Virus record (IMG/VR): IMGVR_UViG_3300044700_000691
Span: 152,816-216,815 of that record
Length of the DNA stretch: 64,000 bases
Strand: one strand, 5' to 3'
The translations under genes and the position numbers were made by a program. Below the pieces are notes generated by a model. The model saw nothing but the letters and a program-made list of their open reading frames with translations, was not told the DNA's origin and searched no databases. Of this stretch, positions 54,189 to 60,597 are shown in pieces; positions within the stretch are counted from its first letter, which is position 1; every line of letters begins with the position of its first letter.

Positions 54189-54216
54189 TTAACAATTTTA
54201 TTAAAAACTATATTTG

Positions 54217-54291
54217 TCGGGATGGCAAGATTCGAACTTGCGACCTCCTGCTCCCAAAGCAGGCGCGATAACCGAGCTACGCTACATCCCG
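54217..54291 (-). tRNA. tRNA-Pro(UGG)
   Basis: CGGGATG acceptor, CCTGC-TT-TGG-GA-GCAGG, GTTCGAATC; no CCA. Confidence 0.95.
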
Positions 54292-54314
54292 AGTAGCTAA
54301 GACTAATATACTAA

Positions 54315-54617
54315 TTAACTAGTAATTAGCGTATTCTCTGTTTGTGACTTTGAACCTGTCAATCCTAATTTTTTATCAAGTCTTGAATCAGTGTAGGATT
54401 TGCACTCTAATTCGACTCTCTTTAATTCTAACTCTAAATCTGTTCTCCATATTTGAAGATCTTGTTGAAAATTTCGATTCATTTGATCGATTCCTTGGTG
54501 CAGATTTTCAATCTGCTTTGCTTGTCTGTTAACCTTAAGCAAACCAATAACAACTACTACTGCAAATGCAATAGCAACCATCGTTAGCATACCTAAAGCG
54601 AATGAAGTTAATTCCAT
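54315..54617 (-). CDS. N-terminal TM plus coiled-coil protein
   Basis: Hydrophobic residues about 5-28 then heptads. Confidence 0.65.
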   Translation of the reverse strand: MELTSFALGMLTMVAIAFAVVVVIGLLKVNRQAKQIENLHQGIDQMNRNFQQDLQIWRTDLELELKRVELECKSYTDSRLDKKLGLTGSKSQTENTLITS

Positions 54618-54678
54618 TGTTTTTAGATTATTTTGTGTCTTAGCTACAATGGTCTTATACTACTAAATAAGAAATGGA

Positions 54679-56780: not shown

Positions 56781-57908
56781 TTAATGGCTGTCACCAACTT
56801 CCCAGTTTTCTGCATATATTAAGTAGTCTGGATTAATTACCTTTGCAACTTTATGACGATCACCGGTGTGGTGTTTTACAACAACTCCTTCGTGTGGCAC
56901 TTTAGTTCCAGGGATAAAATTCTTAAAGACATACATATCTTCAATTTCTTTATTCCACTCTCCAACATATAACACATCAACATAAGGTAAATCCATTTCA
57001 ATTCCAACAAAATTAAAAGATTCATCAGTTGAACAGTATTTGCCATTGATTTCCAAGTCAAACCCTGCAAATTCAATTTCCTTTAGTCCATAATCATAGT
57101 TCTTTTGAATACCTGCTCCATAAATTTCGCCGTATAAAACTACGCCTATACCAATACCGTCTGGGAATCTTTCGGTGTCCTTGGCAAACTTCCATAAAAC
57201 TTCCTTAATGTTATATTTATCGGCAACATCATACCACACATTAGTATCATAGAAACCCTGAGAGTCAGAACCCTTTTCAACATTGTGTGAACCTGCTACA
57301 AATTCATAATCGACCCATTTAACACCAAATAATTTCTTTACTTTATCAAATAAGGAAAGTTTGTTTTTCTTTACAATACCGTATCTTGCATTAGTACCAT
57401 GGATCTTACGAGAAATCTCAACCCAATCTTCTTCGGTAAACATTCCTGGTACATTTTTTGCATTTGGAAATTTATAGTAGATATGAAAGTTTGGATTTTC
57501 GGAATACCTAATCTTTTTACCGCTAGCCAATTGAACCTGTTTAACTGGAGGTTCGTATTTCCAAATATCCATTGCATACATCATGTCCTTACCTTCATAG
57601 TAGTTTTCCATGAATGGAATATGCTTTAACGGAATCACTAGACATTCAGAATAAACACCACGTAATTTTACAGTACGGACCCTACCACCTTTTCTAAGAT
57701 AGTTTGTAACATTAAGTTCATCAGAAAGCTTAATTGGAATTACTGCATCGGTTGTTGCAGTAACTACCCAATCATCAACTTTATATTGACCTTTTTGCAC
57801 AATGCAGTTCCATCCACCAACTACAGCTAATTCAATTTTATCAGCACCTTCAATTGGTTTAATTTCCTTAACTGTTGCAACAAAGCACACTGAATTATTA
57901 TTTTCCAT
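56781..57908 (-). CDS. RNA ligase, DRB0094 family (N-terminal OB/tRNA-binding fold)
   Basis: IKPIEGADKIELAVVGGW; RKIHGTN (motif I), YGEIYG, FDL, HEGVVVK, KVINPDYL. Confidence 0.88.
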   Translation of the reverse strand: MENNNSVCFVATVKEIKPIEGADKIELAVVGGWNCIVQKGQYKVDDWVVTATTDAVIPIKLSDELNVTNYLRKGGRVRTVKLRGVYSECLVIPLKHIPFMENYYEGKDMMYAMDIWKYEPPVKQVQLASGKKIRYSENPNFHIYYKFPNAKNVPGMFTEEDWVEISRKIHGTNARYGIVKKNKLSLFDKVKKLFGVKWVDYEFVAGSHNVEKGSDSQGFYDTNVWYDVADKYNIKEVLWKFAKDTERFPDGIGIGVVLYGEIYGAGIQKNYDYGLKEIEFAGFDLEINGKYCSTDESFNFVGIEMDLPYVDVLYVGEWNKEIEDMYVFKNFIPGTKVPHEGVVVKHHTGDRHKVAKVINPDYLIYAENWEVGDSH

Positions 57909-58374
57909 TTTTGTGTTCGTTTATAAATTTTTTAAGATCTTCTTTTTTCTCATCATTGAATACATCTTCCATTTTAATTTCTTTTACTGGAAGTAGTTGT
58001 AATTCAAATCTATTTTTCATTTGTTCCAACTTATCATCGGGTACGCCATGTAAATTTTTACCGCCATGACGATTTTCAACTATTAGAGAAAATACTTGAT
58101 ATCCAAGTTCTTCAGCCAAATCAAAGTAGGCTGACATTTCCCAAGCTTGAGTAAAGGTATTTGATACTACAATAATAGGTTCGCCAGCTTTCATTTCTGC
58201 CATTACTGAATGACGACACCAAGCATGAGCTTCACTCAATTTAGTTGCATCAAAGTTATAATTAGAATCCTTATCTACAAAGAACATATCTGCTTCATAG
58301 TGCCTGCCGCCTAATTCTTTGGCTAGGGTTGATTTACCACTTCCTGGTAATCCTCTAAGTAAGTATAGTTTCAT
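57898..58374 (-). CDS. polynucleotide-kinase-like P-loop protein (AAA_33)
   Basis: LYLLRGLPGSGKST, EADMFF, VVSNTFTQAWEM..Y, HGVP. Confidence 0.85.
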   Translation of the reverse strand: MKLYLLRGLPGSGKSTLAKELGGRHYEADMFFVDKDSNYNFDATKLSEAHAWCRHSVMAEMKAGEPIIVVSNTFTQAWEMSAYFDLAEELGYQVFSLIVENRHGGKNLHGVPDDKLEQMKNRFELQLLPVKEIKMEDVFNDEKKEDLKKFINEHKNGK

Positions 58375-58721: not shown

Positions 58722-58761
58722 CTTTATTGTGTATAGAGTTATTATACTAAAAAGAATTGAG

Positions 58762-59661
58762 TTAGAGCCTCTCTGTTCTTATTTTAGTCTAAAGATTCGC
58801 CGCAACTAGGGCAAAACTTCCAACTAGATTTTTTGATACGTGAGCCGCATCCGCCACAGTAGTTACGTATCTCAGCAACTTCTAATGGTTTTTTTGAAAG
58901 TGGTAGGAGTTTTATAATTAAAGTTTCGTTAACCCACCAATTATAAGATCCGTTTTCTTCAGAGAATTTTTGTTTTGAATTAGAACCCTTTTCAATTCTA
59001 CCTGTTTCAATTGATCCAGCTACTGGCATTGAAACATTGTTGAGAGTGGTTCCACCATAACTTAAATTACCTACTGCACTTGAGCTAGTATAACTTATAC
59101 CTGAGCCAAGCGAACCTGTACTGGTTCCTGTACAATAGATACTTGGAGTATTAGTAGTTATAGTTGTTCCAGCCCAATTATTTGAATTAATTGTCATTGA
59201 ATTACCATACCAGTAATTTCCTCTTAAGTTCAGCTCATAGAAAAATTCAACTTTAACTTGTCCATTTTTAGCAATAGCTTCTTTGGATTCTGTAGAGTCT
59301 TCAACTTCATATGTTTCAAACTTAAATTTTTTAGCAACATCAAGATAACGCTCAAGGTAAATTCTTTGGCCGGGTCTAATAACTAGACCAGCTTGAGAAA
59401 TCTCTTTACTGTTAATTGAAATTTTTGCTAGTACTTTGAACTGATGGGGATTAAAAATTTCCAGTTCAAATTGTTGTCCGTCATTTAGGTAGACAGAGTC
59501 TTCGTATTGTTTAATACGGTTTTTGTTGCTGGTGATATTCACCGAACAACGCTTTTGTTCTTGTAGTGTATACATTTTAGATTTATATTTTTGCTTACCT
59601 CTTTATGACCATGCGATCATTCAAGGGCTATTAACCCGAGGCGAACAAGGAGAGGCTCTAA
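58762..59661. repeat. inverted repeat pair flanking the zinc-ribbon gene (58762-58778 / 59643-59661)
   Basis: TTAGAGCCTCTC at 58762-58773 is the exact reverse complement of GAGAGGCTCTAA at 59650-59661; TGTTC/GAACA extends it after a 2-nt bulge. Confidence 0.8.
58784..59575 (-). CDS. conserved-looking protein: beta-rich N-domain, S/T/G/N linker, C-terminal zinc ribbon
   Basis: YCGGCG...FCPSCG; 263 aa. Confidence 0.8.
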   Translation of the reverse strand: MYTLQEQKRCSVNITSNKNRIKQYEDSVYLNDGQQFELEIFNPHQFKVLAKISINSKEISQAGLVIRPGQRIYLERYLDVAKKFKFETYEVEDSTESKEAIAKNGQVKVEFFYELNLRGNYWYGNSMTINSNNWAGTTITTNTPSIYCTGTSTGSLGSGISYTSSSAVGNLSYGGTTLNNVSMPVAGSIETGRIEKGSNSKQKFSEENGSYNWWVNETLIIKLLPLSKKPLEVAEIRNYCGGCGSRIKKSSWKFCPSCGESLD

Positions 59662-59681
59662 TCTCTCTTCTTCAATATTAT

Positions 59682-59921
59682 TTACTTCTTATTTTTAAAA
59701 AGTTTCACAGTTCGGATTAGCTGGGCACAGGTTTCTACAACTGCAAGACACAGCGAAACTCTAATAGCCCAATAAATTGACCAGTGTACATTTTCCAAGT
59801 GGTCTAGCGCAATAGTACATAGAGTTACTAGTGAGATTGGAAAAATAAAATTTACCACCACCATTACATAGAATATAAGGTTTAGGATTGAGTGCAGTTT
59901 TTCTTTAGAGTTTTCTTTCAT
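59682..59921 (-). CDS. two-TM membrane protein
   Basis: Two hydrophobic helices in 79 aa. Confidence 0.6.
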   Translation of the reverse strand: MKENSKEKLHSILNLIFYVMVVVNFIFPISLVTLCTIALDHLENVHWSIYWAIRVSLCLAVVETCAQLIRTVKLFKNKK

Positions 59922-60069: not shown

Positions 60070-60597
60070 TTATTTAACTATACGTCTAGCGTAATCGTTA
60101 ACCATTGGTCTACCTGTATTATAACAGCCAACCGCCAATGGCCAACTATCATATCTTTTATACAGATATGCCAAAAGTTTCATTGAAATTTGAACATTTA
60201 GTTCAAGGTTATTTAGTAATTGTTTCTTGGTTATCGGCTCATCCCAAATAAAATTTGCAGTTGGTACCTGTATCTGCATTGCACCATACGCTGCAGCAGA
60301 TGAAGTTAGCTTTGGATTGTATTTCCAATCAAATGGACCATGGTAACCTGTTTCTTCCCTTGCCACTCCCATTGCAATATGGAATGGAACATTATATTCA
60401 TCTGAATATTTCTCTAGATAATAATAAAGAGCTAAACTTGGCGGTGACTTCTCATTGATTGTTCCGCTGCTTAGCTCTTTAGTTGGTTCAGTATTAAATA
60501 GTCTCCAAAGAAAACCAAATGCTAATATTCCAGCCAATACAATGAGAGTTTTAAATGAATTTACTCCCATAATTTTAATTTTAGTGGCCAGTAGCAT
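60070..60597 (-). CDS. membrane-anchored lytic transglycosylase (SLT/GH23)
   Basis: N-terminal TM; VAREETG (catalytic Glu), AYGAMQI, AVGCYNTG. Confidence 0.85.
   Translation of the reverse strand: MLLATKIKIMGVNSFKTLIVLAGILAFGFLWRLFNTEPTKELSSGTINEKSPPSLALYYYLEKYSDEYNVPFHIAMGVAREETGYHGPFDWKYNPKLTSSAAAYGAMQIQVPTANFIWDEPITKKQLLNNLELNVQISMKLLAYLYKRYDSWPLAVGCYNTGRPMVNDYARRIVK

What the first reader, a model, noticed from the sequence alone, without database searches (positions are those of the whole stretch)
58762..59661. Gene bracketed by complementary 5' leader and 3' trailer
Seen: on the minus-strand transcript the leader contains UUAGAGCCUCUC-CU-UGUUC (59661-59643). The trailer, 5 nt after the stop, contains GAACA-GAGAGGCUCUAA (58778-58762). 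This gives a 12-bp perfect duplex plus 5 bp beyond a 2-nt bulge, enclosing the whole 792-nt ORF. The same leader bases can instead form a local GAGAG/CUCUC hairpin, so two folds compete. Inference: a long-range leader-trailer helix that could be an RNase III-type processing site, a circularisation or stability device, a translational switch sensing complete transcription, or terminal repeats of a small mobile cassette. An RNA ligase and kinase are encoded 1-2 genes downstream, but any link is speculative.
Basis: partly seen in the sequence, partly recalled or inferred. Interest (0 to 1): 0.68.

Follow-up and report, generated by a model that had tools for sequence, protein, structure and literature searches.

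The report
Phage mRNA with base-paired ends
The untranslated head and tail of one jumbo-phage messenger RNA can pair with each other; matching mutations preserve this pairing, and a folded three-armed leader, across many related phages, so it is a real and apparently undescribed RNA device that probably protects or tunes this message.

Summary

- **Sequence check.** The 12-nt perfect complement (59661-59650 with 58773-58762) plus 5 bp brackets a 263-aa zinc-ribbon ORF. In this genome alone it is the best flank complement of 228 genes, but only marginally unusual.
- **Comparative evidence.** Among 99 distinct homologous loci (35-88% protein identity), more than half keep an 11-15 bp helix at the same place. 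The 5' arm abuts a leader junction and the 3' arm starts about 10 nt after the stop. The arms fall into about 16 unrelated sequence classes.
- **Leader.** It folds into a three-way junction (P2-P4) in which all 18 pairs show two-sided changes. There is one copy per genome, always 5' of this gene, and no Rfam match.
- **Local hairpin.** A hairpin (H1) competes with the long-range helix, or replaces it where that helix is absent.
- **Start codon.** The start region stays open in both folds.
- **Most likely function.** It is an mRNA end-clamp that shields the 5' end and puts stop next to start. Function is inferred, not shown.
- **Rejected or unsupported.** A mobile-cassette or invertible-DNA reading and a link to the RNA ligase are not supported.

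The parts
59699..59705 (-). AAACTTT, upstream half of a conserved promoter-like bipartite motif
   Evidence: Conserved in leaders of classes A-C at a fixed distance from (G)TAAATA (alignment). It is rare elsewhere in the record: 4 hits against 0.75 in shuffles. Promoter function is inferred.
59679..59685 (-). GTAAATA, -10-like half of the promoter-like motif; overlaps the stop of the upstream 79-aa ORF
   Evidence: The transcription start is inferred to lie about 5-10 nt downstream, at the start of the outer helix.
59668..59673 (-). Outer extension of P1, 5' strand (GAAGAA)
   Evidence: The cofold of leader plus trailer pairs it with UUCUUU 58756-58751. In class B the equivalent outer helix shows compensatory changes: AUUGGAACA/UGUUCCAAU against ACUGGAACA/UGUUCCAGU, and a coordinated deletion in L072.
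59663..59667 (-). GAGAG, 5' strand of local hairpin H1 (alternative fold); GAG 59665-59663 can instead pair with trailer CUC
59650..59661 (-). P1 5' arm core UUAGAGCCUCUC; its last five bases CUCUC are also the 3' strand of H1
   Evidence: (inverted repeat I12).
59643..59647 (-). UGUUC: a lineage-specific 5-bp inner extension of P1 that competes with the base of P2
   Evidence: It is invariant in the 82-88% relatives and absent in other classes, so it is untested by covariation.
59638..59646 (-). P2 5' strand GUUCGCCUC
   Evidence: Pairs with 59601-59593. There are 9 pairs, all with two-sided changes across homologues.
59625..59637 (-). P3 hairpin GGGUUAAUAGCCC
   Evidence: helix 3: 4 of 4 pairs covary.
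59621..59624 (-). Junction J3/4, UUGA, nearly invariant
   Evidence: Invariant columns T49, G51, A52.
59605..59620 (-). P4 hairpin AUGAUC-GCAU-GGUCAU
   Evidence: helix 4: 5 of 5 pairs covary, 93.9% paired. The loop varies (GCAU, CCAU, UUAC) in close relatives.
59593..59604 (-). Junction J4/2 (AAA) and P2 3' strand GAGGUAAGC
59576..59592 (-). A-rich unstructured translation-initiation region without a Shine-Dalgarno sequence
   Evidence: Conserved A-rich block. Predicted 0.70-0.74 unpaired with or without the trailer.
58784..59575 (-). ORF, 263 aa: Ig/MSP-like beta-sandwich, disordered S/T/N/G linker, C-terminal CxxC...CxxC zinc ribbon; function unknown
58774..58778 (-). GAACA, partner of UGUUC, 5 nt after the stop
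58762..58773 (-). P1 3' arm core GAGAGGCUCUAA
58751..58761 (-). Outer extension of P1, 3' strand (CUC, AA, UUCUUU)
58741..58749 (-). TAGTATAAT, promoter-like -10 for the downstream 113-aa gene; marks the end of the cassette
   Evidence: A similar TAGTATAAG sits upstream of gene 54315-54617. No intrinsic terminator was found on this strand.

Best explanation
**What it is.** This is a conserved cis-acting architecture of one phage mRNA.

- The transcript probably starts just 5' of the arm. Its 5' UTR folds into a three-way junction (P2 closing hairpins P3 and P4, with a near-invariant UUGA junction).
- An open, A-rich, Shine-Dalgarno-less start region follows the junction.
- The 5'-terminal segment directly upstream of P2 has two possible partners. 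It can fold on itself (hairpin H1), or, once the whole message exists, pair with 11-15 nt of the 3' UTR that begin about 10 nt after the stop codon (helix P1).
- P1 stacks on P2 and turns the entire ORF into a loop that leaves and re-enters at the P1/P2 junction. The stop codon lies about 10 nt, and the start codon about 17-36 nt, from the same junction.

**How it most likely works (inferred).** P1 acts as an end-clamp on full-length transcripts.

- It buries the 5' end in a duplex, so that nucleases that act from the 5' end and endonucleases that cut the leader are kept off.
- It ties the 3' UTR to the leader.
- It sits just outside the footprint of a terminating ribosome, so translation need not melt it.
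- It leaves the start site free. The result would be a long-lived, repeatedly translated message.
- H1 gives the same 5' protection to the nascent RNA, and to lineages that lack P1.

**Shown:** both helices and the junction exist as conserved, covarying pairings. **Not shown:** transcript ends, stabilisation, or any effect on translation.
For: **P1 (long-range helix)**
- Cognate leader/trailer duplexes score -17 to -41 kcal/mol in 8 of 13 class representatives, against a non-cognate mean of -12. None of 100,000 permutations reached the observed mean.
- In 99 distinct loci, a helix score of 11 or more is found in 54 of 99 cognate pairs against 10 of 297 non-cognate pairs. A score of 12 or more is found in 43 of 99 against 3 of 297. 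The arms fall into about 16 classes with no shared 7-mer.
- Clean swaps exist within a class: GUAUUGAAGGG/CCCUUCAAUAC against GUAUUAAAGGG/CCCUUUAAUAC.
- A further class occurs in a 462-kb phage.
- The geometry is fixed. The 3' arm starts a median of 10 nt after the stop, and the 5' arm ends 0-7 nt before P2.

**Leader junction**
- A plain MAFFT/RNAalifold run already gives 12 of 13 pairs with compensatory changes.
- After covariance-model alignment, 90.3% of cells are paired against 35-45% when partners are slid. All 18 pairs show two-sided changes, and none of 500 shuffles reached the observed values.
- The model finds one copy per locus, always 5' of this gene, and one in the window's own genome at E 1.4e-13. 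It also finds copies in 460-735-kb phages.

**H1 (local hairpin)**
- It is present in most classes and sits directly against P2 in loci without P1.
- H1 regions are more stable than shuffles: Wilcoxon 8e-8 over 63 distinct regions.

**Start site and expression**
- The start region is 0.5-0.8 unpaired with or without the trailer.
- The stretch is present in 20 metatranscriptome runs from 17 studies.

**Precedent**
- A 14-bp 5'/3'-UTR pairing modulates RNase Y cleavage in the B. subtilis hbs leader (PMC5737220).
Against: - No transcript 5' or 3' ends are known. RNA contigs in two runs cross both arms, which means read-through or DNA carry-over. No terminator follows the trailer in this lineage. 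The message may therefore be part of a longer transcript whose 5' end is not at the arm.
- About a third of lineages lack P1 yet keep the gene and the junction. P1 is therefore dispensable, or replaceable by H1.
- A simple 5' hairpin would suffice for 5' protection, so the long-range partner suggests some further role.
- The conserved junction nucleotides point to a specific ligand, protein or ribosome, that this explanation does not name.
- The wobble test for RNA-level against DNA-level pairing is only suggestive: G.U 12 against A.C 5, p 0.07. Leaving out over-extended class-A alignments gives 9 against 2.
Confidence: 0.5

Rival explanations
1. A kinetic or conformational switch of the hok type. 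H1 forms during transcription. The trailer then invades it through the loop once the message is complete, and the change of fold, or later 3' trimming, sets when or whether the gene is translated or bound by a regulator.
For: - Two mutually exclusive folds use the same 5' bases, and both recur with different sequences.
- In class C the trailer pairs with the 5' stem plus the loop of H1. In several classes both arms are hairpins with complementary loops. This is the usual geometry of loop-initiated RNA pairing.
- hok mRNA has exactly this trio: a tac/fbi 5'-3' stem, a metastable 5' hairpin, and 3' processing (PMC9841398).
Against: - Neither fold is predicted to cover the start region: unpaired probability is 0.5-0.8 in both.
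- Class E, the largest class, has little or no H1.
- The product is a 263-aa beta-sandwich protein, not a small membrane toxin. No antisense RNA was looked for or seen.
Confidence: 0.2
2. A double-strand processing site. P1, extended by the outer helix or stacked on P2 to about 21-26 bp, is cut by host RNase III or a similar enzyme. This excises the cistron from a longer transcript, as with the leader-trailer stems around rRNA.
For: - In the window's lineage there is no terminator, and RNA contigs run across both arms. This is compatible with a polycistronic precursor.
- P1 plus extensions reaches about 26 bp with small internal loops in class A and about 20 bp in class B.
- P1 (12 bp) plus P2 (9-10 bp) is about two helical turns.
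Against: - In most classes the continuous helix is only 11-13 bp, and it is flanked by its own promoter-like motif and its own terminator.
- The phage record carries no RNase III gene.
- No cleavage data exist.
Confidence: 0.12
3. The folded leader (junction plus H1 or P1) is the binding site of a specific factor, for example the encoded zinc-ribbon protein acting in autoregulation. P1 merely modulates that site. This is not exclusive of the readings above.
For: - The element is strictly gene-specific, with one copy per genome over very deep divergence.
- Near-invariant unpaired junction bases sit amid freely covarying stems.
- The product carries a zinc ribbon.
Against: - No RNA-binding fold was recognised. 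The matches are generic Ig/MSP-like sandwiches at Z about 6.
- The zinc-ribbon hits are below Pfam thresholds.
- Nothing was tested directly.
Confidence: 0.12
4. A DNA-level inverted repeat: the ends of a small mobile or invertible cassette, or paired operator sites that co-evolve with a DNA-binding protein.
For: - Inverted repeats that stay identical while diverging between lineages are also expected of recombination or operator sites.
- The wobble bias is not decisive.
Against: - There is one copy per genome.
- Neighbours are conserved within lineages and orientation is constant.
- The 5' arm abuts a covarying RNA junction, and the 3' arm tracks the stop codon.
- In class C the trailer matches only the 5' stem plus loop of H1, so it is not a second copy of a palindrome.
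- Helices contain bulges, with coordinated indels.
- Mismatches lean towards G.U on the sense strand.
- No strand-switch joints appear at the arms in the RNA contigs.
Confidence: 0.04

Closest known systems
hok mRNA family (type I toxin): tac/fbi 5'-3' fold-back stem with a metastable 5' hairpin (PMC9841398 and the references in it)
   Same: - A long-range helix between the extreme 5' UTR and the 3' UTR encloses the whole reading frame.
- The same 5' element can first pair with a segment immediately downstream.
- Both structures are supported by covariation across a family.
   Different: - In hok the closed form sequesters the ribosome-binding site and needs 3' trimming to open. Here the start region is predicted open in both folds.
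- Here there is no small toxin and no known antisense RNA.
- Here an additional three-way junction is present.
B. subtilis hbs mRNA 5'/3'-UTR interaction (PMC5737220)
   Same: A helix of about 12-14 bp between the 5' and 3' UTR of a monocistronic message. In hbs it limits endonuclease cleavage in a structured leader and so stabilises the RNA. This is the mechanism proposed here.
   Different: - hbs is a single-species case that relies on a strong Shine-Dalgarno sequence and RNase Y/J1.
- Here the pairing is conserved over hundreds of phage genomes.
- The leaders lack a Shine-Dalgarno sequence, and the nucleases are unknown.
S. aureus icaR 3'-UTR/5'-UTR pairing (PMC3868564)
   Same: The 3' UTR of an mRNA pairs with its own 5' UTR.
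   Different: - In icaR the target is the Shine-Dalgarno region. The effect is repression plus RNase III cleavage.
- Here the target lies 70 nt or more upstream of the AUG.
Leader-trailer stems of rRNA precursors and phage T7 RNase III sites (general knowledge)
   Same: Complementary segments flank a functional RNA and can be read as a processing signal.
   Different: - Those stems are 20 bp or longer, or are local hairpins.
- Here the continuous helix is usually 11-13 bp, and cleavage is untested.
5'-terminal stem-loop stabilisers such as the ompA leader (general knowledge: Emory, Bouvet and Belasco 1992)
   Same: A helix at the very 5' end protects an mRNA. H1 fits this directly.
   Different: Those elements are local hairpins. 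Here the partner strand is supplied from the 3' UTR in most lineages.

Membership tests
hok-type fold-back mRNA | Long-range 5'-3' UTR stem supported by covariation | tested here: met
hok-type fold-back mRNA | Metastable 5' hairpin using the same 5' element | tested here: inconclusive
   H1 is present and more stable than shuffles in most classes. It is weak or absent in class E. Its kinetics cannot be tested here.
hok-type fold-back mRNA | Closed form sequesters the ribosome-binding site | tested here: not met
   The start region is 0.5-0.8 unpaired with and without the trailer in 8 class representatives.
hok-type fold-back mRNA | Small membrane toxin ORF with a cis-encoded antisense RNA | tested here: not met
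   The product is a 263-aa beta-sandwich plus zinc ribbon. No antisense promoter or RNA family was found.
hbs-type stabilising 5'/3'-UTR interaction | Helix of about 14 bp between 5' UTR and 3' UTR of the same mRNA | tested here: met
   An 11-15 bp core at fixed positions.
hbs-type stabilising 5'/3'-UTR interaction | The pairing masks an endonuclease site and lengthens mRNA half-life | not testable with these tools
   Needs decay measurements and cleavage mapping.
icaR-type 3'-UTR repression | The 3' UTR pairs with the Shine-Dalgarno or start region | tested here: not met
   The 5' arm ends a median of 83 nt before the AUG.
RNase III processing stem | About two turns (20 bp or more) of double-stranded RNA | tested here: inconclusive
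   About 26 bp with loops in class A and about 20 bp in class B. Other classes have 11-13 bp unless P2 stacking is counted.
RNase III processing stem | Cleavage in the stem | not testable with these tools
   Only contigs were available, and these cannot show RNA ends.
Any Rfam 15 family | Covariance-model match | tested here: not met
   No hit on either UTR at E up to 1.
Insertion sequence / MITE | Terminal inverted repeats with several copies, variable context and target-site duplications | tested here: not met
   One copy per record. Synteny is kept within lineages. No flanking direct repeat was found.
Invertible DNA segment | Both orientations occur; a recombinase gene lies nearby | tested here: not met
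   Orientation relative to upstream neighbours is constant in 26 representative loci. No recombinase was found among the neighbours scanned.
Riboswitch | Conserved ligand-binding junction coupled to an expression platform | tested here: inconclusive
   There is a conserved three-way junction with near-invariant junction bases. No terminator or start-site-sequestering platform is evident.

The most novel reading that the evidence does not exclude
A base-paired 'closed-loop' prokaryotic mRNA. P1 places the stop codon about 10 nt, and the start codon about 17-36 nt, from one and the same helical junction. Ribosomes finishing the ORF would then be released beside the open, Shine-Dalgarno-less start region and re-initiate on the same message. 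This would be an RNA-only counterpart of eukaryotic mRNA circularisation, evolved in jumbo and huge phages.
Probability: 0.15. Interest if true: 0.88.

Novelty: new variant of a known kind. Interest (0 to 1): 0.72.

Why it matters
Pairing between the 5' and 3' UTR of a bacterial or phage mRNA is known from only a handful of cases. Most were found in one species, and only hok has family-wide covariation. This element differs in four ways:

- **Depth of evidence.** It is kept in at least 553 phage contigs and shows about 16 independent sequence solutions for the same helix. This is as strong as comparative evidence for a long-range mRNA interaction gets.
- **A new leader fold.** It comes with a previously uncatalogued three-way-junction leader.
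- **Testable geometry.** It brings start and stop together in a way that experiments can probe.
- **A ready natural mutant series.** There are lineages with P1, with H1 only, and with neither. These allow a direct test of what end-to-end pairing does for a message in hosts that initiate translation without Shine-Dalgarno pairing.

It also flags an abundant, expressed, conserved jumbo-phage protein of unknown function as worth study.

Tried and rejected
- **Repeat family in the window:** the 12-mer has only the two copies; near matches are scattered.
- **Rfam:** no match.
- **Megablast against deposited phages:** no match.
- **PHROGs:** no match for the ORF or its small neighbours.
- **Extra or ORF-less copies of the leader:** none in the window's own genome or in any locus.
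- **Lak phages:** the gene is present, but the leader model is not significant (E 0.48) in these 19% G+C leaders.
- **General phage promoter hypothesis for AAACTTT-N14-TAAATA:** not supported, with 4 hits in 216 kb.
- **Intrinsic terminator after the trailer in this lineage:** none found.
- **P1 acting as the terminator:** not general, because class B has no U-tract.
- **Trailer complementarity in the H1-only lineages:** none consistent.
- **Transcript ends from public RNA runs:** only assembled contigs were available, and these cannot show ends. Contig ends at 59660 (run X5) and 58768 (run X4) coincide with the arms but are anecdotal.
- **Back-spliced or circular joints:** none reported at the arms. 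Contigs would rarely show them.
- **Functional hint from the protein fold:** only generic Ig/MSP-like similarity and uncharacterised viral proteins.
- **Phage-encoded RNase III:** none.
- **Published IMG/VR structured-RNA catalogue (PMC10690425):** its alignments are not held, so I could not check whether the leader is one of its 'DNAVirus' motifs. That pipeline works on single intergenic regions and could not have seen P1.
- **Wobble test:** less clear than my first count of 8 to 0. The unbiased count is 12 to 5.
Full report
**1. The observation**

Reading the minus strand confirms every letter and coordinate.
- The leader UUAGAGCCUCUC (59661-59650) is the perfect complement of the trailer GAGAGGCUCUAA (58773-58762).
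- After a CU bulge, UGUUC (59647-59643) pairs with GAACA (58778-58774), 5 nt past the TAA stop.
- The pair brackets ORF 58784-59575(-), 263 aa.
- The 12-mer has exactly two copies, one per strand, in the window and in the whole 216,815-nt virus record that holds it.
- The local GAGAG/CUCUC hairpin is the minimum-energy fold of the isolated 5' segment.

A control over 228 crudely called genes of the record puts this gene first for exact flank complementarity (12 nt, 6 G/C). Another gene also reaches 12 nt and two reach 11 nt.

**2. Context**

The record is an IMG/VR jumbo-phage contig, 84% complete.
- The ORF has only sub-threshold zinc-ribbon hits and no PHROG match.
- Relatives occur in Lak phages and other 460-735-kb phages.
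- A single-sequence query found 81 relatives in IMG/VR, and a profile query found at least 553.
- Downstream lie a 113-aa ORF, an AAA_33 kinase and an RNA ligase. Upstream lie small ORFs and an SLT transglycosylase.

**3. The long-range helix P1 is conserved by compensation**

Printing the flanks of the homologues shows the same arrangement with unrelated sequences:
- GAGCCUCGCUCU / AGAGCGAGGCUC
- UAGAGCCUGAC / GUCAGGCUCUA
- GGGGAGCCAA / UUGGCUCCCC
- GAAACCUUGUUG / CAACAAGGUUUC
- UAUACGUUGACUA / UAGUUAACGUAUA
- AUCGUGAUUGA / UCAAUCACGAU

Duplex energies support this.
- Cognate leader/trailer pairs score -17 to -41 kcal/mol in 8 of 13 class representatives. The mean for non-cognate pairs is -12.
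- None of 100,000 permutations of trailers reaches the observed mean.

A second, profile-based harvest added more classes:
- AAAGCCUCGUGUGGC / GCUACACGAGGCUUU
- AAGGGUGCCUUUCG / CGGAAGGCACCCUU
- AAGAGUGGUGCC / GGCACCACUUUU
- GCCUCACUCUU / GAGAGUGAGGC
- UAUAGCGCC / GGCGCUAUA

It also gave clean single swaps. One is GUAUUGAAGGG/CCCUUCAAUAC against GUAUUAAAGGG/CCCUUUAAUAC. Another, in the outer helix, is AUUGGAACA/UGUUCCAAU against ACUGGAACA/UGUUCCAGU.

Over 99 distinct loci:
- a helix score of 11 or more occurs in 54 cognate pairs against 10 of 297 non-cognate pairs;
- a score of 12 or more occurs in 43 against 3;
- about 16 arm classes share no 7-mer;
- the 3' arm starts a median of 10 nt after the stop (mode 8-10);
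- the 5' arm ends 0-7 nt before P2.

A 462-kb phage (LR756500) has its own version, UCUCACUUUGUU/AACAAAGUGAGA.

**4. The leader is a three-way junction**

Between the arm and the AUG lies a conserved fold:
- P2 (9-10 bp) closes two hairpins, P3 and P4.
- A near-invariant UUGA lies between P3 and P4, and a 3-nt purine-rich joiner leads back to P2.
- An A-rich stretch without a Shine-Dalgarno sequence follows, 17-36 nt to the AUG.

The evidence for this fold is strong.
- RNAalifold on a plain MAFFT alignment already finds P2 and P4, with 12 of 13 pairs compensated.
- A covariance model finds exactly one copy per locus, always directly 5' of this gene. It finds one copy in the window's own genome at E 1.4e-13 and copies in four huge-phage records.
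- On the model-based alignment, 90.3% of cells pair against 35-45% for slid partners. All 18 pairs change on both sides, and no shuffle of 500 reaches the observed values. That alignment is fitted to the structure, but the unfitted result agrees.
- Rfam has no such family.

**5. The competing or substituting hairpin H1**

The 5' arm can also pair locally in most classes. Class E, where H1 is weak or absent, is the exception.
- In lineages with no P1 (about a quarter to a third of distinct loci), a hairpin with varying sequence ends exactly at P2. Examples are CUAGAG..UCUAG, UUUAGAG..CUCUAAG, UUAGAG..CUCUAG and UUUAGG..CCUAAG. Their trailers carry only a terminator.
- H1 regions are more stable than shuffles: Wilcoxon 8e-8 over 63 distinct regions.
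- In class C the trailer is complementary to the 5' stem plus loop of H1.
- In several classes both arms are hairpins whose loops are complementary rather than identical.

The trailer is therefore a true antisense partner, not a second copy of a palindromic repeat.

**6. RNA or DNA?**

Several points argue for RNA:
- the 5' arm abuts a covarying RNA junction;
- the 3' arm tracks the stop codon;
- the helices contain bulges and coordinated indels;
- there is one copy per genome, neighbours are kept within lineages, and orientation is constant;
- mismatches lean towards G.U on the sense strand.

The last point is weaker than it first seemed. An unbiased count gives 12 G.U against 5 A.C (p 0.07). 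Setting aside over-extended class-A alignments gives 9 against 2. I put the DNA-level reading (mobile or invertible cassette, or operator pair) at about 4%.

**7. What it does**

*Direct consequences of the structure*
- P1 stacks on P2.
- The ORF becomes a loop that leaves and re-enters at the P1/P2 junction.
- The stop codon is about 10 nt, and the start codon 17-36 nt, from that junction.
- A ribosome footprint reaches roughly 7-9 nt beyond the stop codon (general knowledge). The 3' arm therefore begins about where a terminating ribosome ends, so termination need not melt P1.
- Cofolding predicts the start region 0.5-0.8 unpaired with or without the trailer. P1 is therefore not a translational lock of the hok kind.

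*Transcript boundaries*
- A conserved promoter-like motif lies just 5' of the arm in classes A-C.
- In most classes a terminator lies just 3' of the trailer arm. This suggests a short message whose extreme 5' end is in H1 or P1.
- In the window's own lineage no terminator is seen.

*Reading*
- I take the most likely function to be an end-clamp that shields the 5' end and leader of full-length transcripts and promotes repeated translation. This follows the hbs precedent (PMC5737220) and 5'-stem-loop stabilisers.
- My confidence that the pairings are real and selected is about 0.9.
- My confidence in this particular function is about 0.4-0.5.
- The rivals are a hok-like kinetic switch (PMC9841398), an RNase III-type processing stem, and a protein-binding platform for autoregulation. 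They are scored separately in the rival-explanations section.

**8. Expression**

The stretch is held by 20 metatranscriptome runs from 17 studies, mostly freshwater.
- Laid contigs cover the whole neighbourhood. In two runs they cross both arms.
- This shows presence in RNA libraries. It is compatible with read-through or DNA carry-over.
- Contigs cannot give RNA ends, strand or level.

**9. The protein**

AlphaFold2 with 30 homologues (mean pLDDT 72.8) gives:
- an N-terminal beta-sandwich (residues 10-115);
- a disordered S/T/N/G-rich linker (118-182);
- two further strands that join the sandwich;
- a C-terminal CxxC...CxxC ribbon.

Solved structures give only generic Ig/MSP-like matches at Z about 6. 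Predicted viral structures give confident matches to uncharacterised proteins of giant viruses, iridoviruses, nudiviruses and WSSV. The function stays unknown.

**10. The ligase idea**

The RNA ligase and kinase are neighbours of the cassette only in the window's own lineage. No circular joint was seen. The link remains speculation.

**11. Novelty**

The principle of 5'/3'-UTR pairing is known from hok, hbs and icaR. This instance is new in four respects: its host (jumbo and huge phages), its leader fold, its geometry, and the breadth of its covariation. I file it as a new variant of a known kind. A published catalogue of IMG/VR intergenic structures (PMC10690425) may contain the leader hairpins. 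I could not check this. That catalogue could not have detected P1.

Noticed in passing
window 54216-54650 (-): A possible second leader-trailer pair. GUAGCUAAGAC ends about 20 nt before the AUG of the 100-aa ORF 54315-54617, and GUCUUAGCUAC starts 11 nt after its stop. In relatives with 84-86% identity, a C-to-U change in the trailer keeps the pair as G.U. tRNA-Pro(tgg) at 54216-54291 follows directly. Chance is not excluded.
   Followed up: partly
window 58784-59575 (-), protein: The predicted fold is an Ig/MSP-like sandwich completed by C-terminal strands, plus a zinc ribbon. It matches uncharacterised proteins of giant viruses, iridoviruses (ICP-18), nudiviruses, a granulovirus and WSSV wsv390 with Foldseek E down to 4e-11. 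This hints at an old protein family shared between huge phages and large eukaryotic DNA viruses.
   Followed up: partly
window 56781-58374 (-): An RNA-repair-like pair: an RNA ligase (PHA02142 OB fold plus RNA_ligase) overlapping an AAA_33 kinase. Five tRNA genes lie within 14 kb (Leu-tag, Arg-tct, Pro-tgg, Leu-taa, Met-cat).
   Followed up: partly
window 57928-57952 and 59263-59282: RNA contigs from three runs share a 'joint' that skips 1310 nt. The matching sides are only 20 nt long, and the loose ends are identical foreign sequence. This is probably a contig of another organism with short similarity, not splicing.
   Followed up: no
window 58741-58749 and about 54640-54650 (-): TAGTATAAT and TAGTATAAG stand upstream of two small genes. 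This may be a recurrent phage promoter -10 element.
   Followed up: no
window 60425-60481: A perfect 11-nt inverted repeat (TAAAGAGCTAA / TTAGCTCTTTA) with a 35-nt spacer lies inside the SLT transglycosylase gene.
   Followed up: no
L055 (IMGVR_UViG_3300037010_002556), L089-L091 (Lak-C1, Lak-B5, LR756508): These homologues of the gene have no detectable leader junction. L055 shares upstream neighbours with L079, which has the junction. The loss therefore looks recent in that lineage.
   Followed up: partly
window 56902-56930 (+): A weak Rfam hit to Ocean-VII (16.3 bits, gathering threshold 53.5, E 0.39) inside the ligase gene. I treat it as noise.
   Followed up: no
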